DNA from: Caecitellus pseudoparvulus | Taxonomy: Eukaryota; Protista; Bigyra: Bicosoecida | Assembly (NCBI GenBank): GCA_965644315.1 | Contig: CBFFRQ010000181.1 | Location: forward strand, 1 to 12,204 | Reading direction: 5' to 3' | DNA length: 12,204 bases | In this document: piece by piece, positions 3 to 12,204 of the stretch | Numbering within the stretch: the first letter of the stretch is position 1 | Layout: each line of letters opens with the position of its first letter | The notes under the pieces: model-generated | Database searches by the model: none | The model's input: the letters and a program-made list of their open reading frames with translations, nothing else | What the model was told of the DNA's origin: nothing | Made by a program: the position numbers and the translations under genes

Positions 3-29
3 GAGCACCAAACATGAGTTGATTTCACC
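3..29 (+). repeat. Left TIR of outer element (GAGCACCAAACATGAGTTGATTTCACC)
   Basis: Exact reverse complement of 9157-9183 (27/27). Confidence 0.95.
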
Positions 30-44
30 CTCCTCGCGAGGAGG
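29..44. other. Perfect 16-bp palindrome CCTCCTCGCGAGGAGG abutting the left TIR, flanked by direct repeats TTGATTTCAC (19-28, 46-55)
   Basis: Read directly from the sequence; function unknown. Confidence 0.7.
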
Positions 45-505
45 CTTGATTTCACGCTTGACGGCAGCTTTGAACGCGGCGCTTACAGAGGGACCCGAAG
101 GTTGCAATTTTGCAACCGAATGCTCTGCACGATAAAAAATGCATTTCGGATGATTTCACCACGTCTTGTACGGTTCTGACCGTTGTTGCTGACTGTTTGC
201 ATCCATTCATATTTCAACAGGCCTAAAGCCGCAGCCCATGTTTAAACCATGCTCAACATGTCATCTTGTTGTGGGTAAGGTAAAATGGACAAATCTAGCT
301 CAAGGAGTGGTTTGGTGGGTGATGGGGGGGGCAACGAAGGTGTGAGTGAAGGTGCAGGGCGATGCTTTAAATCGTCTGAATTTCGCTCTATTATGGGGCT
401 CAAGTCAGCACAGCTGTCAGGCAATACAATCAACATACAGTATATACACTGATTTGTCCGTCTTTGTGCTGATATTCGCAGGCTGTGACGCGAACAGGGG
501 CTCAA

Positions 506-2611
506 ATGGAGCAAGGTGAAACTCCGGCAAAACGCCGGGGGACAAAAAGAGGCCGAGTACTGCAGAAACAACGTATACCGCATGGGCCTTTCACGGAGAG
601 CTGGACGACACTCTGCTCAATCGCCGAGCTTGTCCACGAGATGAGCACGGCGCTGCTAAAAGAGTGTGCGGATGAGATGCGAGACACAGGCCTTGCGAGG
701 CGCATCCGCGCACATGCCCGGAGTGGCGTACCGCTTGGACAGCGGGCTGCCAAACGGAAACCCAGTCCGAAGCTGGCATCGATAGGCTTAGGTCACCTTC
801 TTAACTCTGAGGCTGAATGCCGCACGTACTTGGGGATGGGGAGCAAGGCCGCGCGGCACCTCATCGACGGGGTCATCCACAGCATTCAAGCTGACAAACT
901 TGCAGACCCCAAGCTCCTTTCAGCAACTGTCGCATACTCTCCGGAAGTTCGGATCGCTGCTTCCGTGATGCGGGTACGGGGGGTGCGTTCACGTGAGATA
1001 AGCTTGCTATTTCGATGCTCCTCCCAATCCGTTCAGCGCTGGACTGCCGACCTGTTACCATATCTGGGGGGGTTTGTGGGTCGCTACCTTCGTGTCCCCG
1101 TGTCGGAGTCACTTCGATTGGCCGGGAAGATGATGTATGGTGGTACCGTAGGGACTGTGGTTGGGGCAGTTGATGGGATGACTGTACAGATCCACGGTGA
1201 CAGCATACAGTTCTATGAAGGGCACCACAAACACAATGGTCTGGAGTACGTGGTCGTGGTTGACTTGCAAGGATACCCGCTGGGAATGCGCCTTTGTGGG
1301 CGCGGTACACAGTACGAGCCCACTCATGCGGCAATCCTCCTCGCTGAGCTCGTAGAGTGTGGGGTGTTGAAGGAAGGCGATCTCATATTCGGAGATTCAT
1401 TGTACACGGGTGACAACGGGCTGATTCGGGCAACCGCGAGGCCCACACACCAGCTCAAACTCGCAAGAGCAGCTGAAGAGCTACTGCAGAGTGCCATCTC
1501 TGCTGGTAAGGAGCCCCCACCGTCCGTCCGAGCCACAGTAGCTCTGGTGTTGGTGCACCAGCTGTCTGACTCATGGATGTCAGGTTTGCGACTTGTGGTG
1601 GAACACTTCATCAACTGTGTCAAGTCTTTCAACCTTTCGTTCAGCAACCAAAGACCTTGCCTTCCGTTCAACATAAAAGACGACCGCTCCCTTGACTCAT
1701 TCATGAGGTGTGCCATTGGATGCGTCGCCTTTCGGATGGCAGTGGAAGGAACACGTCTCCGCTCCCAAACCTTCCTGACACTCAAAGAACACTGTAAAGG
1801 GCCATCAGAGCTAGCTGAGAACGTGAGGCGATGCTTGGTTGACCGGCAAACAGGGTATATCCAGCGACCAGACAAGTTCGAGAGTGATCCTCGCCGTCGA
1901 AGTGTTCGTCGAGACTTTTCAACACACCAGCGTCTGTACAAGGCAATAGTCGAACGCGAACTCGGCCCGTACCCCACACCACAAACTCCCCGCGAGGACG
2001 CGTGTGTATACTGGATCAAAGCGCTTAGAACATTGCTGGGAGTTCCCCCATCAGCCATTGACGCCATTGTACAAGGGGGTGTCCGTGCGGTCCGCAGAAG
2101 CACACCTGATGGGCATCCACGCCCTGATCCAGAGATGGTAGAGGCGAGTGGTGTAGCCCCGAAAGCAGCCCGCCTTCGTTCAGCAAAGCCTGCATCCTCC
2201 GGCTCGTCGGCGGTGGCCCTGCCTGACCTCCAGCCCCTTGACGCAGTGCAGCCACCCAAACGAGCTCGACGAAAGCGAGAGCCCTCGCGCAAGTGGCCGT
2301 TGATGCATGGGGACATCAGAGAGACAGGTGAACTGTTGTGGGGTGTAAATCAGGTGCGTGGGGTTGGGTACTGTCTTCTACAGGAGGCGCCAGACGAGAT
2401 GTGGATTGCGCATTGGTTCATGCCAAATGGTGAGCCTGAGTGCAACGCCAGTGGGGCAGCCCTTGACACACCATACCAAGGAAAAGCACACATTGCTGCG
2501 CTGAAAAGCAGCACGGCACCCATAAGGCTTCAAGAAGTCATTGGAGTCCTTGGCGATGAGTGTACCCTCGTGCAACTGGCATCGGACTGGAGAGCTGGCC
2601 GGGTGGCATGA
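506..2611 (+). CDS. Harbinger/ISL2EU-like DDE transposase (HTH_Tnp_4-like + DDE_Tnp_4-like + extra C-terminal domain), 701 aa from first ATG
   Basis: Motifs: ECRTYLGM; HTH-like SPEVRIAASVMRVRGVRSREISLLFRCSSQSVQRW; GAVDG (D at 1172-1174); FYEGHHKHNG; VVVDLQG; IFGDSLY (D at 1394-1396); RLVVEHFINCVK (E at 1601-1603). The ORF track opens at GTG 485; the first ATG is at 506. Confidence 0.9.
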   Translation: MEQGETPAKRRGTKRGRVLQKQRIPHGPFTESWTTLCSIAELVHEMSTALLKECADEMRDTGLARRIRAHARSGVPLGQRAAKRKPSPKLASIGLGHLLNSEAECRTYLGMGSKAARHLIDGVIHSIQADKLADPKLLSATVAYSPEVRIAASVMRVRGVRSREISLLFRCSSQSVQRWTADLLPYLGGFVGRYLRVPVSESLRLAGKMMYGGTVGTVVGAVDGMTVQIHGDSIQFYEGHHKHNGLEYVVVVDLQGYPLGMRLCGRGTQYEPTHAAILLAELVECGVLKEGDLIFGDSLYTGDNGLIRATARPTHQLKLARAAEELLQSAISAGKEPPPSVRATVALVLVHQLSDSWMSGLRLVVEHFINCVKSFNLSFSNQRPCLPFNIKDDRSLDSFMRCAIGCVAFRMAVEGTRLRSQTFLTLKEHCKGPSELAENVRRCLVDRQTGYIQRPDKFESDPRRRSVRRDFSTHQRLYKAIVERELGPYPTPQTPREDACVYWIKALRTLLGVPPSAIDAIVQGGVRAVRRSTPDGHPRPDPEMVEASGVAPKAARLRSAKPASSGSSAVALPDLQPLDAVQPPKRARRKREPSRKWPLMHGDIRETGELLWGVNQVRGVGYCLLQEAPDEMWIAHWFMPNGEPECNASGAALDTPYQGKAHIAALKSSTAPIRLQEVIGVLGDECTLVQLASDWRAGRVA

Positions 2612-2659
2612 TGTGCCATAGGCGGAGAGCAGACAGCAGGTTTTGGTGGGCTGGATCAG

Positions 2660-4307
2660 TTACTGTCCACTGCTCGTGACATTCATGCTGGCTGCAATAT
2701 TCTCCAACATGTGTTCAATGCGCTTCAGGCGTTCCTCCGCTGCCGCAGCTCGCTCCTCCGCTGCTGCAGCTTGCTTCTCCAGCTTGACCATTGTTGCATC
2801 AGCCCTTACAAAGTGTGCCAGGGCCCCGCTCACCGCATCAAGCGTGACCAGACTTCGCTCCGATAATTCATGAATCCTTTGCGCCCTTTGCGCTGCGTGC
2901 ATGGTGGCTTGCACGTCGGATGCGAAGAGGTCCACCTCCTCTCCTGATGAGCTTGCGGAATCAGCACCTGCATCAGCCCTCCTGCGTCGCTTGGCACGCT
3001 TGGAGCGCTGGAAAGAACGCATCTCACGAGCCCCTGCAATCCCTTGAGCGATGGACTGCAGCGCCTCCTCTGAGGTACGAGTGGGGCCCGGCCACCAGCT
3101 TGTCGCTGCGGGCCCGCCACTGCCTGCCCCGCTCTGGACAACTTGCGATGAAACATGTGCAGCTGGTGTGGGGAGCAAGGCGCTGGCGATGTCGGGAACC
3201 GTTCCGTTGAGTACCTGGTCAACGGGGTCAGCGCTTTGGGTGTGGGCGGAGGGCAAGGTTGAAGCGGCGGGGAGGTTGGGGACGGCACCGTGCTCCGGAC
3301 TGGCTCCGGTTGGCTCCCTGGCACGCTTTCGGTACGACCCTCTTTTTTGCCCCATGCCTTTCACTTTCGTGAACAGCTTTGTGTACAGCTGTACCGCCCA
3401 TGCATAAAGGACAAGGTGAAGATTTGAAGTGTTTATGTTTTGTGCCTCACGAGTTGGGCAGTACTCGTGCTTGCCGTGGCTGCCTGGCACAGACACTTCT
3501 GTCATGTGCGGCGGGGGGCTTCCAACTTGCACTCGTGAGCACTCAGGCTCGAAACATGTGAGAGGCATGGCGACCCCGAGTGCGCCTGGAGGGGCATCCG
3601 GCGGTAAGGGTGGATACACGGCCCGCAACACCATGTCCACCGTCACAGCGTATGCAGCTGGATAAAGCAGGCCTGCGACTTCTTCTTCAGACAATGCAGG
3701 GAATAGACATCCTTGAACTCGCTCAATTGATTCTACAACACGTTGAAGCTTCATGGAGGGCCGCTTCCTGTTTCTCAGGAAGCTGCCAACGTTGCGTGGC
3801 AAGCCAACGAGAGCTCGGGCAACCTCCTGATCAAATGCAGGGCTGCCCAGCTCTGGGATGCTGCATGCAGGGATTCCAAGTGCCCCGATCTCGCCTAAAA
3901 CCCGTTTGGGGGGATAAAAACCGATGGATGTCGCTCGCGCATTCAACTGGAACCCTGGCTCGTCTTCGGACGAGCCAGGGACTGGCGAGAAAATGGATCG
4001 GAAGTATACAGTGAAGGGAGACGTCTTGTTACGAAGTTCGGAGCAAGGAGGGTGCGTGGTGTCTCCTCCTGGGCTTTCAATCTGCTTCTTGAGGAACTTG
4101 AAGGCCGACTGTGCGAAGGGTGAAACGCCAACGTGACATTTGAGGGGTCGCCACCACCAGAGAAGCTCCCAGCAACGCCAAACTCACGACGAACAGCATT
4201 GCAGCAGCAACATCACTGGCTTTAGCGCCCACATTTTTCCGATGGGGTCGCTTGCCTCTAGAAGTGCTTCCAATTGTCGGCGTCGATGAAACGCCAACCC
4301 CTTCCAT
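2660..4307 (-). CDS. Accessory (ORF2-type) protein of outer element, predicted 522 aa; exons 4307-4188 and 4108-2660
   Basis: The frame of the 428-aa ORF stays open upstream to 4183 but has no ATG there. A phase-0 GT-AG intron joins it to the ATG at 4307 (…AAAMLFV|SAFKFLKK…). It contains CFEPEC…HGKHEYC, a low-complexity linker, basic NLS-like patches and a C-terminal coiled-coil-like helix. It is similar to the inner element's accessory protein. Confidence 0.78.
2730..2771. repeat. 21-bp tandem duplication (2 copies, 19/21 identical) encoding AAAAEER x2 in the coiled-coil tail
   Basis: cgttcctccgctgccgcagct / cgctcctccgctgctgcagct. Confidence 0.8.
3953..3980. other. Perfect 12-bp stem hairpin with C(TTCG)G loop on + strand, inside exon 2 of the accessory gene
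   Basis: CCCTGGCTCGTC-TTCG-GACGAGCCAGGG. Confidence 0.75.
4109..4187 (-). other. Predicted 79-nt spliceosomal intron in outer accessory gene
   Basis: Donor GTGAGT (4187-4182) and pyrimidine-rich acceptor tttcacccttcgcaCAG (ends 4109). Both sites are phase 0 and join two open frames. Confidence 0.72.
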
Positions 4308-4332
4308 GGGTGCGTCACGGATTGGTGGATCA
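4304..4332 (+). repeat. Left inverted repeat of inner element including target duplication (CCATGGGTGCGTCACGGATTGGTGGATCA)
   Basis: Exact reverse complement of 8825-8853 (29/29; 31/32 if extended inward). Confidence 0.95.
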
Positions 4333-4830
4333 GGGTTGGTTTGAACTCCAGGGGCCCCTGTGATTTGTCACCAGCGGAGTCGATTTCCACAGTGAGGAGG
4401 TGTTGTGCAATATGAATTTACCAGCGCCTCCCATCCACTCATGTATGCCTTGTTGGGTGTTCTTTTTTTCGTGCAACTGAGGGTGCGGCAGTACGCGGGT
4501 GTTTGTAGCCGTTTGTGCTCGTGTCTCGATCGGCAGCCCTGCCCCAGCGCAACGTAGGCCCGCTCGTTCGCCTAAAACGGATACTCATCTGTTTCTCCGC
4601 TTTGCACTGAATTGCCACTCAGTGCCTTGGTCTTGGTACTTTCCTCAGCAAGTCTCGAGCACAGTTTGAATGGTGAGCATAACGGCAAGATTTTGAGCGT
4701 TGCTCACAGGTCAAGGTCTCCCCTACCGTGAAAGCAGGCGGGACTTCAAGCCCAAGGGAGGCTAGATCGGCGTGCGAAGTCACAAAGGGGGACTGCATTG
4801 AGTCCACCGGAGCACACCATTCTTGCAGCT

Positions 4831-4902
4831 GTGAGGGTTTGAAACGGTGTGCGGAAATCGCTACGCATACCGTCACACTTCCCCCCCTCCTTTGCCAAAT
4901 AG
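4831..4902 (+). other. Predicted 72-nt intron in inner accessory gene (a further 65-nt intron at 4673-4737 after ATG 4670 is possible)
   Basis: Donor GTGAGG and acceptor cttccccccctcctttgccaaaTAG, both phase 0. Splicing removes in-frame stops and gives …PPEHTILAA|AILYNTK…. With ATG|GTGAGC…aagCAG the protein would be 519 aa, close to the 522 aa of its homologue. Confidence 0.5.
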
Positions 4903-6366
4903 GCGATTCTCTACAACACAAAGGACGCCCCAGTGACGGGGGGCATGTTGGGCACAACTCCTGGGTCACTTTCCTTCTCTTGTCTGTCTCGGGAGCGCCC
5001 CTTTGACCCGAGTGGTGCAAACAACCTACAAAGTCCAGCTACCATGCTCTCTGAATTGGGCATCCCCGTGGATGGACACATCCTGGGCGACGCAATCCTG
5101 CGCCTTTCGAACAGAAATGCCCCCGTCTTTGTATTGGACCCCGCTCTCATCCCCGAATTCTCCTTCCAGAAGCTGGACAGTCATGGACTGTGCTCCCGGC
5201 CGAAGTGCAAGGCACATGCATCAGCCGTGTTTCATGCTACCCACTGCATGTTTTACCATGCAACAAGGAAGAACCTGAACAAGGCACACGCTGAGTTCCA
5301 AGACGTGTTCACTGAGCTGTGGGACAAGGCATGTGCCATGCGAGGCCTACCGAGCACCAGCCGGACTGTTTACCCAACCGTCGCGGACATGGTGCAGACC
5401 ATGTTCCGTGTTTACGAGGACATCGTACCTATTTCCTTTCATGCTCTCATTGACATGTGGTTGGTCCGCAGACTCTTGGACCTCCACAACGCCCCTCGTG
5501 CGAGCCTGGCAACCTTCACGCAGGTCCAGAGCCACGCTGTTGGCTTGCCGATGCAAACACTCCACACCCAGCAGGGTTCACTGGGGCCACCCGGAATCCA
5601 AGGGTCAGCTGTAAGTCAAGAATCGCAAGGAAGTGCCAGCAACGTTCCTACTGTCCCCTCCCTCGGGATATCTCTGGGGCAAGCACCCGCCCCCCAACCC
5701 ACGCCGCCCACCGGAGGGCTGGGTCCAGTTGAGGGCAGCGGAGAGAGCTCCTTGGATTCGTCTTTTGCGAGTAGCACCCAAAGCCACAGCGCGTTGCTCG
5801 AGAATCCTCATCTGCCTCATGACTCGCACGATCTGGCCGGACAGTCACAGCCTGGGGAAGAGCCCGTGGAGCCCGATGCGCAACGTGCTGCCCGAGCAGA
5901 AGCTGCGCGTCAATCGGCGCTGGTGGGGATGGGCATTTCTTCGGCAGTAAATGCTTTTGCTCGTGATGCGATTGCCCTTCTTGCACCATTCGAGAAAATG
6001 GCAGAGATGCTCGTGCTGCTCGTGGACAAAGTGGACCAGGGCCGGGCAGATCAGAGGAGAGCTGTGGAGCTCCTCAGTGTCATAGCTTCTTCACAAACTG
6101 GGCACATTCCCGCTGACACTGCAAGTGCTTCGAGGTCACCATCTTCTTCTCGTGCCCCACCGAGCTCTTCTGGTGCGATGCGGCAAGAAGGATTAGGTGG
6201 TCCCGCCCCAACTCCTTCACCCGAGGCTTCGGACCGCCCCACCATTGGCGGTCACAAGAGAACTCGCCCAAACTTCACTGACAACGTGCCAAGCACAGGA
6301 GATGCATTTCTCCAAGACGTAGCGAGATACAACAGACGCCGCCGAGGGCACTCTGACTCCCCGTGA
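4903..6366 (+). CDS. Accessory (ORF2-type) protein of inner element, main exon (ORF track 4933-6366; first in-frame ATG 4945; likely upstream exons 4670-4672 and 4738-4830)
   Basis: Long ORF convergent with the transposase. It shares blocks with the outer accessory protein: PATMLSELGIP vs PKRVLGEIGALGIP; CSRPKC…HATHC vs CFEPEC…HGKHEYC; GISSAVNAFAR vs AVSGALAHFVR; ELLSVIASS vs HMLENIAAS. Confidence 0.8.
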   Translation, partial: AILYNTKDAPVTGGMLGTTPGSLSFSCLSRERPFDPSGANNLQSPATMLSELGIPVDGHILGDAILRLSNRNAPVFVLDPALIPEFSFQKLDSHGLCSRPKCKAHASAVFHATHCMFYHATRKNLNKAHAEFQDVFTELWDKACAMRGLPSTSRTVYPTVADMVQTMFRVYEDIVPISFHALIDMWLVRRLLDLHNAPRASLATFTQVQSHAVGLPMQTLHTQQGSLGPPGIQGSAVSQESQGSASNVPTVPSLGISLGQAPAPQPTPPTGGLGPVEGSGESSLDSSFASSTQSHSALLENPHLPHDSHDLAGQSQPGEEPVEPDAQRAARAEAARQSALVGMGISSAVNAFARDAIALLAPFEKMAEMLVLLVDKVDQGRADQRRAVELLSVIASSQTGHIPADTASASRSPSSSRAPPSSSGAMRQEGLGGPAPTPSPEASDRPTIGGHKRTRPNFTDNVPSTGDAFLQDVARYNRRRRGHSDSP

Positions 6367-6371
6367 TTGTT

Positions 6372-8515
6372 TCACTCGTTCACGTAGCCGTAGTTGTAGG
6401 ACTGACAATCCATCATGTACGCGACAAGCTGACTCCCGTCAAAGTCCTCCTTGAAGTGCTCTGGTGGGAGCCACGTGTAGTCTTTCTTTGCCACGTCGCG
6501 GGTCTCTGCTTCAAGGAGGGATGTGAGCAAGTGCCCTCCGGTCTGCCCATCAGGGAGGGTCTCGAGGAGTTCATCTCCGTACTTGTCATAGTACCACACA
6601 TCATACGCCTCTTCTGACTCCTCAAAAGTGGCGGTGTCTCGAGTGGGTTCAATAAGAGCGTAGACGATCCCACGAGGGTAGGACAGCTCAGGATCATGAT
6701 TGTACTTGCCGACTACAACTGGCTTGCCGGCAAGAGCAGCCTTGTCTGCTGCAGCACCCCACAGCTTTTCAAGATCCATGACTTCCTGTGGGCGTACCTT
6801 GTCGTCGTCAGTCTTGGCGGGGCGGCAGTATCCAGGTGGAGAGTGTGGCGATGTCATGATGCCAGGAGAGGAGGCCCCCCAGGGGATGCGACACCAGAGC
6901 GTGGCGAGACAGCTACCTGCCTGCGCTGCTTTTTCAGCCTGCCAAGTTCTGTGAGACCACCGCACAAAATGCCACTTACAAGAGGAGACAAGTTCCCTTG
7001 TTCCGACCAGGCGAGCACTTGCTGCAGCTGAGTAGCAGCCTCAATATCGCTTCGTTCCAGTGAAGGCCTCCCGGCCGTACCCAACTCGGCCCCGCGAAGC
7101 AGCCGTAAGACGTCATGAAGAAAAGATACGCTCCTTCGTTTCGCGATGCCGCTCGGAAGGCTTGCGTCAAGTTCACTGTCACGGCGATTAGAAGCAGGAC
7201 AATCTCCAGCCAAGGATGCAAACAGCTCAAACAGGACGAGTGCTGGCTGACGCGAACCGCGGATGTGGAGCCACTGCTCTGACCGAGGAACCCGGTGCCC
7301 CTCTGCTTGTTGGAAAGCGAGCATCCCAGCAGTAATGTACCCCATGTCTCTGATCTCTTTTTCCTTGGTTTGCGCTTGCAATGGTCTGACACTGGACGAT
7401 CGGACGAGACCACACACCGTCTTGAACTCCTTCACACAGTTCTCGACAACCTGGCGACCTGACACGAAGATCTTACGCTGCACAGTTTTGTGTGCCAGGG
7501 CGGAAGCCGTTGCTCTTGCCAAGTCCCGTGGAGAATGCAGAGAGCCAGGGGCTGGCGAGGAGACCCACAGAGACTGAACTCGGGCCGCCATCTTCTCCAA
7601 CGCCTTGTTGCCCGGAAGGTGCCGCACAGCAGGCCTGACTCCCTGGAATACACCGTCACCGACAAAGTACTCGCCTTGCTTGATGGCGCCTGAGCGCAGC
7701 ATGCGCTCGGTTGCTCGTCGCGCGGCTGCAATCTCAGACACTGTGTTGCCCTTGCCCATGGGTTCGATCCATATAACCCTCCCCGAAACACTGCAGAACA
7801 ACAGAAAGTTGTACCCGTACATCGAGTGGTGGTTGCTGTACCAGATGCGGTTCTCTTTGTCTGAAGAAGTTGCTTTCGTCTCCCATGTCAGGCCGTCTAC
7901 GAACCCTACCAGCCCTGGAGCCAGTCCACCATGGAAGGAAAGCGCCTCTCTGCGGTGCTCTGGAAGCACTGCCCAGGGCAGCGCTTTGTAAAAGAAGGTC
8001 TTCAGCACTGGAATCAACCGAGGAATGCTGTCTTGGAGAGTAGTAGCGGCAATGCTCAGCCTAGACGTGATCTCTTGGCGGTTGCGCCCGGCACACACCA
8101 TCATCACCCCGAGCAAGAGGTCGGCTTCACGCCCATTCTGGATGTCCCTGAGGGCGTTCCACCTCAAGAAGCTGTCCGATATCAAGCCAGAGAGGGCTTT
8201 GGCTAAATTTCTTGCTCTCATGCGCATGAAGGTGAGGCACTCGCCCGATGTGAGGAATTCGTAGGTGGGTGTCCCCTTGCGGATTTTGGGGTGCAGCCTG
8301 GCCCCCTCCATCGAGTCGTTGCGGTCGATGTTGCGACGTTTCGTGCCCCGCAGCTTTTGTGTTTTATGGTATACCCTTTTGATCAACTTGTGACCGACAT
8401 GTTGAATCACGCAACATGCAGAATGTGGCGCAGAGGCCCGTCGCTCAACGGATGCTGCCGTTGTCGGGGTGACAGAAACGCTCGGCTGCACCAAGCGTGA
8501 TTGGGTGGACTCCAT
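6372..8515 (-). CDS. Harbinger/ISL2EU-like DDE transposase of inner element, split by one frameshift near 6875-6885 (ORFs 6854-8554 and 6372-6965); ~714 aa if rejoined
   Basis: Motifs: ECLTFMRM; HTH-like RQEITSRLSIAATTLQD; GFVDG (D at 7895-7897); WYSNHHSMYG; FVGDGVF (D at 7655-7657); RQVVENCVKEFK (E at 7442-7444). The downstream ORF carries RGIVYALIE, matching RGVGYCLLQ in the C-terminus of transposase 1. The first ATG is at 8515. Confidence 0.87.
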
Positions 8516-8824
8516 TGCCTCGAAAATGCCACAACACCCGAATAATTGTACCAATGCTTGATTTCCAGAGTCCTAATCGCCGCTCTTGCAGTGCTGACTC
8601 TCTCAGGGTTGATTTCCTGTCTCGACAGCGTGCGACCCCTTTCTCACTAACGCCTGGGGCAAAAAATCAAGGTTCGGCTCGTTGATCTCGCCAAAATGGC
8701 TAAAACAGTTCCTCAGGCATGGTACATTCTCTTTTTCCCGACAGTCAACTAGCGCAAACATAGAAAGATTCTAAGTCGATGTGTTGATCTCACAGGATTG
8801 ACACAAGCCGTTGGTATCTCGCCT

Positions 8825-8853
8825 TGATCCACCAATCCGTGACGCACCCATGG
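8825..8853 (-). repeat. Right inverted repeat of inner element including target duplication
   Basis: TGATCCACCAATCCGTGACGCACCCATGG, the reverse complement of 4304-4332. Confidence 0.95.
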
Positions 8854-9156
8854 GCAAGCGATTGTATCTTCGCTTGAGGAAACCACCTGCCGCAGATCTC
8901 CCTGAATTCAAACCCCACAGCGATTGGAAAGCATAGTTTCGGCTTTAATAAATTGCATGCATGTCTCAAATGCCCCGGACTTTTCAGGAGTGTGCCAAAA
9001 CGTCAGGTGAACAGTCAAGCTCAATCCGACAAGAGATCGAGAAAAACAAACCGTACATAGTTATTCATTTCTACTCTTTACTGTTCAGCAACATCCCCAT
9101 GCAGCGTGCGAGGCCATTTTCGAGTTGAACGCAGAATCGACCATCACAGCCAATCC

Positions 9157-9183
9157 GGTGAAATCAACTCATGTTTGGTGCTC
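9157..9183 (-). repeat. Right TIR of outer element
   Basis: GGTGAAATCAACTCATGTTTGGTGCTC, the reverse complement of 3-29; followed by GCATGC. Confidence 0.95.
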
Positions 9184-9261
9184 GCATGCTGAACTTGCTC
9201 GGGTGCACAGGCTGCAGCATCAGGCGAAGGGCCAAATCGTGCTGAAGTTCCCAGTGCGAGC

Positions 9262-11142
9262 ATGGACAGCGCACAGGCTGACTTGATGTTGGCTTGCCTG
9301 CGCAAGTTGAATTGTTCACCAGGGGTTGCGATGGCGCATGTGCCAGCACTGCGAGGACTGGCGGCCATCGGGCGTGGAGAGCCTTGTGAAGCCGAACCTG
9401 CCCCGTTCTCTACCACCCCAGTGGAACTGGAGGGCTTGCTGCACGTGGCGGGGAGTGCGCTGTTGGAGCAAGCTGGGCTGTTGGCGGGGCAGCGTGAGCG
9501 AGGTGATGTGTGTGCTGCGCTGCAGTACCTGTCGTTCCGGTGCTTCGCCGCGGTGGATGTGCTGCACCAGGCGGCGTCTGGTGTGGAAAAAGAAAGACTA
9601 CCAGAGGGTGACGCACTGTGGGGCGCTATTGTGGGTGCTTGGGGCAGTGTGCGGGCCGGTGTGAATGTGGAGGGAGCGCTGGCTGATCTTACGCGGTGGT
9701 GGCAGGGCTTCACGATAACGGATGTGGCTGTGGCTGGAAAGGGTGGCCCCATCATCCACGATGCCGACGGCAAGGTAGCGATGGATGCGGCTCTGGCTGG
9801 CATGCGTCAGCAAGCTGAGTGGCTGCGAGGCGATGCGGCTGGCGAGCTGGCGAGTGAGAGTGCCGCGGAGCAACTGGAGCGTGCGGCGAGAGCGGTGGAG
9901 GAGATGCGTGGACTGTTGGGGTGCGCTCTGCTCATCAGTGGTCGCAAGGTTACAGCCGCACCTGGCCTGGATCTGCTTAGTAGTTTAGAGTGTTTTAACA
10001 ACGAGGACTCGAGTATGTTCACGGGAAAGAGCCGCATCGACGATGAAGAAATTGGTGGAGCTGGGGATGTGGAGCAGTGGGCAGCAAGCGTGGAGGCGGA
10101 TGCGACTGCGCTCGCCACGAGTGTTGGCGCTGTGAAGCGTGGCGAAGCGGTTCGCATCGCCAGGGGACTGCCGCGCATGGCACAGACTCCACGCAAAGCA
10201 GCACTGGCACACGGCTTCATGGGAGGCAGGCCAAGTGAGCCACTTGGCGAGACAAGCACGGTGATGGTGCAGGTCCAGTGTGAACAAGGGTGGCCGCTGA
10301 ATGCCTTTTTGTGTGACATGGCGTGGGATGATGTTGAGCTGGAAGTGAAAGAACAAGTCTGCGTGAAGGTGCTAGGCGCGTGTGCTGCAGCGGAGGCTTG
10401 TGGGGTGAGTCTGGATGGTGTGGGTGTGGGAAGCTTCGTTGTGGTGGGTTTGGGGAGTGGCAGTGTGGGTGATCTGGTGGTCGCACTGGATGGGGGTGGA
10501 TGTGAGGTGGTGTTGAGTGCGTGTGGCAGTGTATGGGGAACGAGCGACGATGAAGCAAGCGAGTCTGACAGCGAACACGCCAGAGTCGGTGAAGACGTGG
10601 CCATCGCACTTGCTGAGGTCCTGGGATCAGACCGTGATGTGGATGGGAGTTCAGAATCAGCAAGGGGCTCCATTGCAAGTCACGGACATATCAGCGGCCA
10701 TGTTCTGTCAAACGCGTTGCAGGCGTTGAGCGAAGGTGGGCCCAAGTGCTGTGCGGTAGCATACTCGCTGGCATGTGCGTCGATGGGTGACAAGTCTAAG
10801 TGTCAAGAAAGAGATGGCAAAGCTGTGTCAGCATGCACACAGCTGCAGCTTGCGATTGGCAATGTGGCTGAGCGCCGAAACTTGACAGCGCAAGCATTCA
10901 CGAATGCCTGTCGTGATGGGGATGCTGAAACGTTCTGCATGTGCTTGGTCCTCACTGGCGATAGGGCAGTGGATGTTCATTCCTCAGACGGGAATGGAGC
11001 TGATGCCGCTTTTCGAGAGGCATGCAGGTATAATCGCACAAACATCGTACGTGAGCTACTTAACCTCACTGGAGAGAGGAGGATTCCAGACAGTGCGCGA
11101 CAAGAAGCAGCACGTTTCGCTGAATTGAAAGACCTCATCTGA
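9262..11142 (+). CDS. Host protein (626-aa ORF, possibly the last exon of a longer gene) with degenerate kinase-like segment and C-terminal ankyrin-like repeats
   Basis: Long Ala/Gly/Glu-rich ORF outside the TIR. Ankyrin-like units are AFTNACRDGDAETFCMCLVLTGDRAVDVH and AAFREACRYNRTNIVRELLNLTGERRI. The frame is open from 9193, with a candidate acceptor CAG at 9208-9210. Confidence 0.72.
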   Translation: MDSAQADLMLACLRKLNCSPGVAMAHVPALRGLAAIGRGEPCEAEPAPFSTTPVELEGLLHVAGSALLEQAGLLAGQRERGDVCAALQYLSFRCFAAVDVLHQAASGVEKERLPEGDALWGAIVGAWGSVRAGVNVEGALADLTRWWQGFTITDVAVAGKGGPIIHDADGKVAMDAALAGMRQQAEWLRGDAAGELASESAAEQLERAARAVEEMRGLLGCALLISGRKVTAAPGLDLLSSLECFNNEDSSMFTGKSRIDDEEIGGAGDVEQWAASVEADATALATSVGAVKRGEAVRIARGLPRMAQTPRKAALAHGFMGGRPSEPLGETSTVMVQVQCEQGWPLNAFLCDMAWDDVELEVKEQVCVKVLGACAAAEACGVSLDGVGVGSFVVVGLGSGSVGDLVVALDGGGCEVVLSACGSVWGTSDDEASESDSEHARVGEDVAIALAEVLGSDRDVDGSSESARGSIASHGHISGHVLSNALQALSEGGPKCCAVAYSLACASMGDKSKCQERDGKAVSACTQLQLAIGNVAERRNLTAQAFTNACRDGDAETFCMCLVLTGDRAVDVHSSDGNGADAAFREACRYNRTNIVRELLNLTGERRIPDSARQEAARFAELKDLI

Positions 11143-12204
11143 CATTTTCATCACATCTTTGACGATGCACACTCGACATCCACAACCCAAGCAGGATTGT
11201 GTGTTCATTCAGTGGAACGGTCTTGTTTTGTGCCGCTGATACCTCACGCACTAACCTGCAAAATGCAATACCTTGAAGCTACATTGATTTGTACCAACGG
11301 GATATCAGTCTGCACCTTTCCTCAGTTTTCCAAGTAGAGATGTACTAGTCACATTTTCATGTGCAGTTTAGAGAACTATAGATTCTTTCGAGGCAGCAAA
11401 TGCCTTGCTCTCAACACCAGATTGACGCTTGTACTTTGCCACCACGGTCATTTCACGCAGTCTCGGCTTGGCTAGAGAAAACTTTATATTGTTTTTTGTC
11501 GCTAAATATCTCAAACCAAACATCGTATCGCTGTCTCGTTGTGTTGCTAAACGTGTACCTTTCAGTGCAGGTACAAAACAAACAATGGTGCAAACCCTGA
11601 GACAATCTCTGCTGCTTGGAAGTTTCTGAGTTTGCATGATCTGAACGTTTTTAAAAGTGGATATCTGCAAAACGCACTGTTGACAAGAATCACTCTGAAG
11701 CATGATTTCAAGAAGGAACACATGTCGCTCAAGAAAGAGTGACACTATTGTATGCAGAACAGGACGAAAGCTGTGTAGGGTGATCAGTAAAGATAAACAA
11801 GATGGGCCACGTGGATTTGGTTAACCGAATTTCCTGTGAGATTGTTGCACTCAACTTCAAACACACAACGAAACGATTGCCAGCATTGGTTTGAAGTGAT
11901 TGAATTGACTTCTGTACGTTGAACTCTGATGCTCTGCAGTCGACAATCCAATCGGCATTGAGCTTCTGCAGATTACTGCAGTTGAAATCACTTTAGTGGA
12001 AAGGCACATGATTCTAACGAAGGAGTCTTGTAAGGGAACCTCTATTTATTGACTGTCAGTCAGTGGACAAGTTTACAGATGTTTGCAAATCGATTGCCAG
12101 ATGATTCTAGACTTTTACACATACCCGGAAAGAAATGCATTGCAGTGTTCGACAATGTTGTGAGACTCTACCTCCCGAAGCAATGCCAGATTCTCTGTAT
12201 TTTG

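What the first reader, a model, noticed from the sequence alone, without database searches (positions are those of the whole stretch)
3..9183. Possibly undescribed two-gene PHIS (Harbinger/ISL2EU-related) transposon lineage, seen as two diverged full-length members
Seen: two elements of ~4.5-4.6 kb, each with TIRs, a ~700-aa DDE transposase and a convergent ~520-aa partner. The pairs are similar only at motif level, yet layout and sizes match. Established: PIF/Harbinger elements pair the transposase with a Myb/SANT-like protein and make TWA TSDs. ISL2EU elements make AT TSDs and often carry THAP and YqaJ domains. Inference: a CATG-centred target, DD68-70E spacing, an extra C-terminal domain and a Cys/His partner fit neither group, so this may be a new clade.
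Basis: partly seen in the sequence, partly recalled or inferred. Interest (0 to 1): 0.85.

Follow-up and report, generated by a model that had tools for sequence, protein, structure and literature searches.

The report
Nested transposons of a new Harbinger-like group
Two jumping genes, one inserted inside the other, belong to a rare group from marine protists that is distantly related to Harbinger/ISL2EU transposons but duplicates 4 or 5 bases of its target, carries an extra protein domain of unknown fold and has an unrecognisable helper gene.

Summary
Element B (4309-8848, 4540 bp, 27-nt TIRs, CATG duplication) sits inside element A (3-4308 plus 8853-9183, 4637 bp, perfect 27-nt TIRs). Each encodes a ~700-aa DDE transposase and a convergent partner ORF.

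Both transposases fall in one well-supported clade. It has at least 5 families in this 30.6-Mb genome and 8 or more in marine metagenomes. Only 15 of 1.84 billion representative proteins match it at E below 1e-10. Its nearest outsiders are ordinary DDE_Tnp_4 (Harbinger- and ISL2EU-type) proteins.

Features shared by the clade:
- Target duplications of 4 bp (B, 6 of 7 copies) or 5 bp (family C, 7 of 7), with variable sequence.
- Second D to E spacing of 61-84 residues, against 37-49 in other DDE_Tnp_4 proteins.
- A C-terminal domain modelled with high confidence, with no fold or sequence relatives.
- A fast-evolving partner that is not Myb/SANT, THAP or YqaJ.

The "CATG-centred target" and "Cys/His partner" are not supported.

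B is recently active: copies differ by 0-8 nt, and reads contain A without B.

I rate it a new group within the PHIS superfamily, not a new kind of element. Other first-stage notes of this scan flagged copies of families B and C elsewhere in this genome.

The parts
3..4308 (+). Element A, left part. It contains A's transposase and partner genes and ends at the left copy of the CATG duplicated by B.
   Evidence: TIR pair I2. A contig of run X3 joins 4303 to 8848, skipping 4544 bp, which gives A without B.
3..29 (+). Left TIR of A (27 nt, perfect). It contains the TGATTTCAC motif, which recurs at 46 and 150 of A and in the right TIR.
   Evidence: Only three matches exist in the genome: the two in the window and one on a truncated relative on C23.
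506..2611 (+). Transposase of A, 701 aa from the first ATG (the listed ORF starts at 485). It has an HTH, catalytic residues D223/D297/E366, and the C-terminal domain at about residues 588-701.
2660..3946 (-). Partner ORF of A, 428 aa, convergent with the transposase. The frame stays open upstream to about 4180, but an in-frame stop follows the likely ATG, so this copy may be defective.
   Evidence: It is homologous to the partner of family A' (phmmer E 1e-31). No Pfam hit.
4305..4308 (.). Left copy of the 4-bp target duplication (CATG) made by B.
4309..8848 (+). Element B, 4540 bp, inserted into A. It is one of about 8 full copies that differ by 0-8 nt.
4309..4335 (+). Left TIR of B (27 nt, one mismatch to the right TIR).
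4945..6366 (+). Partner ORF of B, 473 aa from the first ATG. It is predicted to be helical, then disordered, then a long C-terminal helix, and has basic clusters.
   Evidence: No Pfam hit and no atlas lead.
6372..8515 (-). Transposase of B. In this copy it is split into two frames (8515-6854 and 6965-6372) at the C homopolymer 6875-6880. It is intact (714 aa) in other copies. Catalytic residues are D207/D287/E358.
   Evidence: (an extra C after 6874 in all four runs).
8822..8848 (-). Right TIR of B.
8849..8852 (.). Right copy of the 4-bp target duplication (CATG) made by B.
8853..9183 (+). Element A, right part, ending in the right TIR (9157-9183).
9184..9188 (.). Probable right copy of A's 5-bp target duplication (GCATG). 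The left copy is cut off by the contig start; only its last two bases, TG, are present at 1-2.
   Evidence: The A-less paralogue on C95 reads ...ACACATG|GCATGCTGAAC. Duplications of 0, 5 or 8 bp fit the data. Relatives A', C and D make 5 bp.

Best explanation
The region holds two cut-and-paste DNA transposons, one nested in the other. Both belong to a previously unrecognised, deeply branching group related to the PIF/Harbinger-ISL2EU-Spy (PHIS) transposons.

Each element has about 27-nt TIRs, a ~700-aa transposase and a convergent partner gene. [quoted passage not shown]

Shown here:
- The element boundaries, copy numbers and target duplications (4 bp in family B, 5 bp in family C, variable sequence).
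- A precise empty site for B.
- The same two-gene layout in 11 or more diverged families.
- Monophyly of the transposases, and homology of their HTH and DDE regions to DDE_Tnp_4 proteins.

Inferred:
- The transposase binds the TIRs and subterminal repeats through its HTH, excises the element, and inserts it with target cuts staggered by 4 or 5 bases.
- The partner has basic clusters and a long C-terminal helix and evolves along with its transposase. By analogy with Harbinger's Myb-like protein, it may be an element-specific cofactor that recruits the transposase or brings it into the nucleus.
- The C-terminal domain either docks the partner or contacts chromatin.

Family B is currently or very recently mobile. 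The A copy here is probably defective in its partner gene.
For: - **Ends.** Perfect 27-nt inverted repeat at 3-29 and 9157-9183, and a 27-32-nt repeat at 4304-4335 and 8822-8853.
- **Family B.** About 8 full copies differ by 0-8 of 4540 nt. Six of 7 have 4-bp duplications of differing sequence. A read-derived contig skips exactly 4544 bp, which is B plus one duplication.
- **Other families.** Family C has 5-bp duplications in 7 of 7 copies. A' and D are compatible with 5 bp.
- **Superfamily.** Pfam gives DDE_Tnp_4 at E 1e-5 to 1e-6. hhalign of the clade profile gives E 2e-9 against a PIF-like protein and 6e-10 against a THAP/ISL2EU-like protein. It gives nothing against E. coli IS5.
- **Rarity.** The profile search of 1.84 billion proteins found 15 hits below 1e-10, all clade members. 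Scores then drop to 50 bits or less for ordinary DDE_Tnp_4 proteins.
- **Tree.** The clade has 100/100 support.
- **C-terminal domain.** Conserved in all members. AF2 model at pLDDT 91.6.
- **Layout.** All external members have a convergent partner of 357-531 aa with no Pfam hit. The partner homology groups mirror the transposase subclades.
Against: - No labelled Harbinger, ISL2EU, Spy, Pangu, Nuwa or ISfinder references were available. The clade could therefore nest within a described but rarely sampled Repbase lineage.
- Homology between partners of different subclades is not statistically demonstrated (best hhalign P 1.3e-3).
- The partner's role is pure analogy. The complex prediction gave no answer, and the partner model is poor (pLDDT 44).
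- No RNA data were found.
- A's own duplication cannot be read because the contig starts 2 bp before the TIR.
- The duplications of A' and D rest on a single copy each and are ambiguous (5 or 7 bp, and 5 or 3 bp).
Confidence: 0.8

Rival explanations
1. These are ordinary, merely divergent PIF/Harbinger elements. The unusual features are lineage noise and the group is already represented in Repbase or Dfam under Harbinger.
For: Pfam DDE_Tnp_4 hits. Two-gene convergent layout of about 4.5 kb, as in Harbinger. HTH plus DDE homology to PIF-like proteins. Repbase could not be searched.
Against: - The duplications are 4-5 bp of variable sequence, not TWA.
- The partner has no Myb/SANT hit.
- The clade is separated from all sampled DDE_Tnp_4 proteins with 100/100 support and a large score gap.
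- The D-to-E spacing is about 30 residues longer.
- The papers consulted list only 0-3 bp duplications for Harbinger relatives (PMC4482050, PMC12730594).
Confidence: 0.12
2. The group is an independent eukaryotic offshoot of bacterial IS5-family insertion sequences rather than a branch of the eukaryotic PHIS radiation. Some IS5-family elements make 4-bp duplications.
For: The 4-bp duplication of family B resembles that of the IS5 subgroup (my own knowledge of ISfinder). Pfam DDE_Tnp_1 (IS4/IS5) scores about as well as DDE_Tnp_4 for A and A'. The backbone of the tree is unresolved.
Against: - hhalign against E. coli IS5 is not significant, while eukaryotic DDE_Tnp_4 proteins reach E 1e-9.
- No NCBIfam IS-family model matches any of 10 members.
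- The N-terminal HTH region aligns with the ISL2EU- and Harbinger-type HTH.
- All members have eukaryote-style long ORFs and a second gene.
Confidence: 0.05
3. The second ORFs are not functional genes. They are chance or antisense frames, and the elements are really single-gene transposons.
For: No Pfam, atlas or structural signal for any partner. Sequence conservation between subclades is near zero. dN/dS between two family C variants is only mildly below 1 (0.52 from 28 differences).
Against: An uninterrupted frame of 357-531 codons sits at the same position and orientation in 11 or more families whose DNA is diverged beyond alignment. Four pairs of partners are clearly homologous at protein level (E 1e-25 to 1e-31) and track the transposase tree.
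Confidence: 0.03

Closest known systems
PIF/Harbinger (PHIS superfamily)
   Same: Cut-and-paste elements with TIRs, about 4-4.6 kb. An HTH plus DDE_Tnp_4-type transposase paired with a second, separately encoded protein. D1-to-D2 spacing of about 75 residues. hhalign E 2e-9 to a PIF-like protein.
   Different: - Duplication is 4-5 bp of variable sequence, not 3-bp TWA.
- The partner has no Myb/SANT domain.
- The transposase is about 700 aa with an extra C-terminal domain.
[quoted passage not shown]
ISL2EU / Spy
   Same: PHIS-type DDE core. The region N-terminal to the HTH (L.S...C..YTG motif) aligns with a THAP-bearing ISL2EU-like transposase (hhalign E 6e-10). Two ORFs, as in many ISL2EU elements.
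   Different: No THAP domain and no YqaJ exonuclease partner. The duplication is neither AT (ISL2EU) nor absent (Spy).
Pangu, NuwaI, NuwaII and PHISTA groups of PHIS
   Same: Minor PHIS groups that are defined mainly by their target duplication and by variation in the partner gene (PMC4482050, PMC12730594).
   Different: Their duplications are ANT, CWG, TNA (or CTNAG) and TA. None of the 14 duplications read here fits these patterns.
Bacterial IS5 family
   Same: DDE transposase of the same broad superfamily. Some IS5 subgroups make 4-bp duplications (my own knowledge).
   Different: IS5 elements are single-gene, 1-1.5 kb, with transposases of about 330 aa. There is no significant profile match to E. 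coli IS5 or to any NCBIfam IS model.

Membership tests
PHIS superfamily (Han et al. 2015 criterion) | Transposase alignable over the catalytic DDE region with members at E below 1e-4 | tested here: met
   hhalign of the clade profile against two DDE_Tnp_4 proteins gives E 2.1e-9 and 5.8e-10. Pfam DDE_Tnp_4 is above the gathering score for B, A' and C and just below it for A. The DDE triad is conserved in 12 of 13 members.
PIF/Harbinger group | 3-bp TWA target site duplication | tested here: not met
   B: CATG, CCAA, TTAA, AGAT, TCTT, TCTT. C: TCTGC, GTAGG, ACAAG, TGAGA, TCTCG, TCTGC, TTAGT.
PIF/Harbinger group | Second ORF encodes a Myb/SANT-like DNA-binding protein | tested here: not met
   No Pfam hit at E of 0.1 or better for four partner sequences, apart from one chance-level hit (PhageMin_Tail, E 0.056); A's partner has no hit below E 0.27. 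A structural test was inconclusive because the model is poor (pLDDT 44).
ISL2EU group | AT dinucleotide duplication | tested here: not met
   The empty site shows that 4 bp are duplicated.
ISL2EU group | THAP domain in the transposase and a YqaJ exonuclease partner | tested here: not met
   No THAP or YqaJ Pfam hit in any transposase or partner scanned.
Spy group | No target site duplication; insertion into AAATTT | tested here: not met
   Duplications are present in 13 of 14 delimited copies of B and C.
Pangu / NuwaI / NuwaII / PHISTA | Duplications of ANT, CWG, TNA (or CTNAG) and TA respectively | tested here: not met
   None of the observed 4- or 5-bp duplications fits these patterns. Definitions are from PMC4482050 and PMC12730594.
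Any described PHIS group | Transposase nests within the group in a phylogeny with labelled Repbase or ISfinder references | not testable with these tools
   No labelled references were available. The tree used unlabelled DDE_Tnp_4 proteins and E. coli IS5 only.
Bacterial IS5 family | Significant similarity to IS5-family transposase models | tested here: not met
   No NCBIfam IS model hit for 10 members. hhalign against E. coli InsH gives probability 0.7%. Only one IS5 reference was tried.

The most novel reading that the evidence does not exclude
This is an undescribed, currently active group of the PHIS superfamily, confined so far to marine protists. [quoted passage not shown]
Probability: 0.6. 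Interest if true: 0.65.

Novelty: new variant of a known kind. Interest (0 to 1): 0.58.

Why it matters
- **Classification.** PHIS groups are defined by their target duplication and partner gene. A lineage with 4-5 bp duplications, a lengthened catalytic core, an unrecognised C-terminal domain and a non-Myb partner would add a new group. It would also widen the known range of target-cut spacing within one transposase superfamily.
- **Experimental access.** Family B looks intact and recently mobile, with near-identical copies and filled and empty sites. That gives a testable two-protein transposition system from a small-genome marine protist.
- **Wider biology.** It bears on how transposases recruit cofactors, and could serve as a genetic tool in marine protists.
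- **Genome annotation.** These elements and their ORFs would otherwise be called as orphan host genes.

Tried and rejected
Rejected: only the window copy of B has CATG.
- **AT duplication with a GGG...CCC terminus for B.** Rejected: other copies have no G before GGTGCG.
- **TA duplication for family C** (an earlier scan note). Rejected: TA belongs to the TIR, and 5 bp are duplicated in 7 of 7 copies.
- **Partner function.** Pfam, the ESM atlas and AF2 gave nothing usable. hhalign between partner groups was weak.
- **Binding of the partner to the transposase C-terminal domain.** Complex prediction gave no answer, which is neither support nor evidence against.
- **C-terminal domain.** Foldseek against PDB gave a best E of 0.28. 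VIA-align gave a best Z of 3.9, with a few PWWP, BAH and Tudor-like rows at Z 2.5-3.5 that are within noise. The atlas fold search gave TM below 0.45. The profile search for stand-alone relatives and the atlas feature search found nothing.
- **Bacterial IS models.** NCBIfam gave no hit. The PDB sequence search with the transposase profile gave no hit.
- **Duplications in metagenome contigs.** Not readable: the ends were missing or the flanks did not match.
- **Organism behind NCBI assembly GCA_024449685.1.** Not found in the paper library.
- **RNA evidence.** No RNA runs were found.
- **Fetching all families in full.** A', C and D were reconstructed from small pieces.
Full report
**Anatomy of the window**

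The window is the first 12,204 bases of contig C181 of a 30.6-Mb, 215-contig genome. Read searches link it to a marine organism.

Two long inverted repeats stand out:
- 3-29 with 9157-9183: 27 nt, perfect.
- 4304-4335 with 8822-8853: 32 nt, 97% complementary.

The two elements are therefore nested, not side by side. Element B occupies 4309-8848 (4540 bp). Element A is 3-4308 plus 8853-9183 (4637 bp). B is flanked by CATG on both sides.

A contig from public run X3 joins 4303 directly to 8848 and skips 4544 bp. That equals B plus one copy of a 4-bp duplication, so A exists without B. This is a precise empty site. It shows that B's insertion is real and recent, and it fixes the duplication at 4 bp.

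**Genes**

- **A transposase.** ORF 485/506-2611 on the plus strand, 701-708 aa.
- **A partner.** Convergent ORF 2660-3946 on the minus strand, 428 aa. Its frame stays open upstream for about 506 codons and matches the N-terminus of the A' partner there. An in-frame stop follows the likely ATG, so this copy's partner gene may be broken.
- **B partner.** 4945-6366 on the plus strand, 473 aa.
- **B transposase.** Convergent, on the minus strand. In the window it is split into 566-aa and 197-aa frames.

The split in B's transposase lies in a C6/C7 homopolymer at 6875-6880. Four other genomic copies carry an uninterrupted frame (733 codons open, 714 aa from the ATG). Contigs of all four sequencing runs examined have the extra C. 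The frameshift may therefore be a slip in this copy or an assembly error.

B landed about 350 bp upstream of A's partner ORF.

**Copies and target duplications**

*Family B.* About 8 full copies differ from one another by 0-8 of 4540 nt. With termini GGTGCG...CGCACC, six of seven delimited copies have identical 4-bp flanks: CATG, CCAA, TTAA, AGAT, TCTT and TCTT. One copy has none.

*Other families.* The genome holds further related families:
- A': 49% transposase identity to A, 2 copies.
- C: 9 or more copies, with a SAP-tailed transposase.
- D, plus a degenerate relative.

Family C has termini TAGGTC...GACCTA and 5-bp duplications in 7 of 7 copies: TCTGC, GTAGG, ACAAG, TGAGA, TCTCG, TCTGC and TTAGT. 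A' (TTTGT) and D (TCTCA) fit 5 bp. Each rests on one copy and allows an alternative reading, 7 bp for A' and 3 bp for D.

*Element A.* A's left flank is cut to 2 bases by the contig start. A 96%-identical paralogous site on C95 lacks A and reads ...ACACATG|GCATGCTGAAC. This allows a duplication of 0, 5 (GCATG) or 8 bp. A's TIR occurs nowhere else in the assembly except on a truncated relative on C23.

**What the transposases are**

Pfam gives only weak DDE_Tnp_4 and DDE_Tnp_1 hits (E 1e-5 to 1e-6), an HTH_23 hit in A' and a SAP hit in C. No NCBIfam IS model matches.

An alignment of 13 members shows these features:
- A conserved HTH.
- The catalytic D, D and E in motifs VDG, GD and VVE(N/H).
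- A conserved C-terminal block of about 130 aa (HG...GY.L.E...W..WY..DG.E).

A profile of the family was searched against 1.84 billion representative proteins. It found only 15 proteins at E of 1e-10 or better. All are clade members or fragments of them, from marine metagenomes plus one NCBI assembly. The next hit is at E 1.7e-8 (50 bits or less). The ten of these weaker hits that I scanned are all ordinary DDE_Tnp_4 proteins, some with THAP, HTH_Tnp_4 or Plant_tran domains.

Profile comparisons give:
- E 2.1e-9 to a PIF-like protein.
- E 5.8e-10 to a THAP/ISL2EU-like protein.
- No significant match to E. coli IS5.

In a maximum-likelihood tree of the core, the 13 members form one clade with 100/100 support. 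It is separate from ten other DDE_Tnp_4 proteins and from IS5. The backbone is unresolved. A and B sit in the two deepest subclades: (A, A', C, D, P0004, P0005, P0007) and (B, P0002, P0009, P0011).

The D1-to-D2 spacing is the same everywhere, at 73-80 residues. The D2-to-E spacing is 61-84 in the clade against 37-49 in the others and 55 in IS5.

**C-terminal domain**

AF2 with a 15-sequence alignment gives a confident alpha/beta model (pLDDT 91.6, pTM 0.87). No search recognised it:
- Foldseek against PDB: best E 0.28.
- VIA-align against 48,161 chains: best Z 3.9, below the noise level stated by the tool. A few PWWP, BAH and Tudor-like rows appear at Z 2.5-3.5, which I do not count as evidence.
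- ESM atlas fold search: TM below 0.45.
- Profile search for stand-alone relatives: nothing.
- Atlas feature search: nothing.

The domain is real, specific to the clade and of unknown function.

**The partner gene**

All six external contigs examined have a convergent ORF of 357-531 aa directly after the transposase, with no Pfam hit. Families A', C and D in this genome have the same layout.

The partners are homologous in four pairs: A with A', C with P0004's, P0011's with P0009's, and D with P0005's (E 1e-5 to 1e-31). These pairs match the transposase subclades exactly. Each partner has therefore been inherited together with its transposase.

Between subclades, similarity is marginal. The best hhalign result is P 1.3e-3 over a collinear N-terminal stretch of about 170 residues.

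No Cys/His pattern is conserved. Common themes are a helical N-terminal half, a low-complexity middle with K/R clusters, and a long C-terminal helix. The AF2 model is poor (pLDDT 44), so I did no fold search with it.

Two family C variants differ at 28 sites in the partner ORF, with no stop or indel and dN/dS of 0.52. That is only mild support for constraint. The stronger argument for a real gene is that a long frame persists at the same place in 11 or more families diverged beyond DNA alignment.

**Mechanism**

These are cut-and-paste elements with a DDE transposase. The 4- or 5-base duplication implies target cuts staggered by 4 or 5 bases.

A carries four copies of TGATTTCAC in its termini, and A' has GATTTCGC at the same TIR position. 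These are plausible protein-binding sites.

By analogy with Harbinger, I infer that the partner is an element-specific cofactor for DNA binding, recruitment or nuclear import. In Harbinger, a separately encoded Myb-like protein binds the subterminal DNA and brings the transposase into the nucleus (established knowledge; see also the abstract of bioRxiv 10.64898/2026.05.26.728016). I also infer that the C-terminal domain is its docking site or a chromatin contact. Neither inference is shown.

**Comparison with known groups and novelty**

The PHIS groups described in the papers I could read make these duplications (PMC4482050; PMC12730594, which states "0 bp, 2 bp, or 3 bp"):
- Spy: none.
- ISL2EU: AT.
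- PHISTA: TA.
- Harbinger: TWA.
- Pangu: ANT.
- NuwaI: CWG.
- NuwaII: TNA or CTNAG.

None matches the duplications here. None is described with this C-terminal domain or this partner. Full-text searches found no PHIS lineage with 4-5 bp duplications.

I therefore rate this a new group (variant) within a known superfamily, not a new kind of element. The main caveat is that Repbase, Dfam and ISfinder references could not be used.

Other first-stage notes of this scan flagged copies of families B and C elsewhere in this genome, including the 5-bp duplication of C. I checked those points independently here.

Noticed in passing
L019 (G000:C94:157870-162195), minus-strand ORF 748-2967: An intact 740-codon homologue of the A/A' transposase in which all three catalytic residues are replaced (D, D, E become S, T, Q). 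It keeps the C-terminal domain and sits on a very long branch. It could be a domesticated or decaying copy.
   Followed up: partly
window 9184-12204 (ORF 9262-11142, plus strand): A is inserted 78 bp upstream of a 626-aa ORF. Its first ~1.3 kb has 40 or more paralogues at 76-79% nucleotide identity across the genome. A stretch at 10936-11117 matches short tandem units in those paralogues. A 96% copy without A lies at C95:134219. GC skew is strongly positive (0.2-0.34) over 9000-11000.
   Followed up: partly
L048 (G000:C159:8435-12974): One full-length B copy has no matching 4-bp flanks (TTGT on one side, CCAT on the other). This could result from recombination between two copies or from a flank deletion.
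   Followed up: no
window 4334 joined to 8824 (runs X3 and X6): Read-derived contigs join B's left TIR to its right TIR with 13 unrelated bases between them. This is either a miniature TIR-only derivative of B or a k-mer assembly artefact at the inverted repeat.
   Followed up: no
L053 (G000:C99:26676-26780): A solo 105-bp terminal fragment of a B-like element, 93% identical.
   Followed up: partly
L014:2992-3531 (family C transposase C-terminus): The family C transposase carries an extra SAP motif after the shared C-terminal domain (Pfam E 8.4e-5, just under the gathering score).
   Followed up: partly
run X12 (organism B) laid on window 4966-8805: A second organism label carries a B variant with 68 differences over 3841 nt (1.8%). 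Family B is therefore shared between related strains or species.
   Followed up: no
window 2733-2780: A 21-bp tandem repeat (2.3 copies) near the 3' end of A's partner ORF encodes a repeated AAAAEER segment in the predicted C-terminal helix.
   Followed up: no
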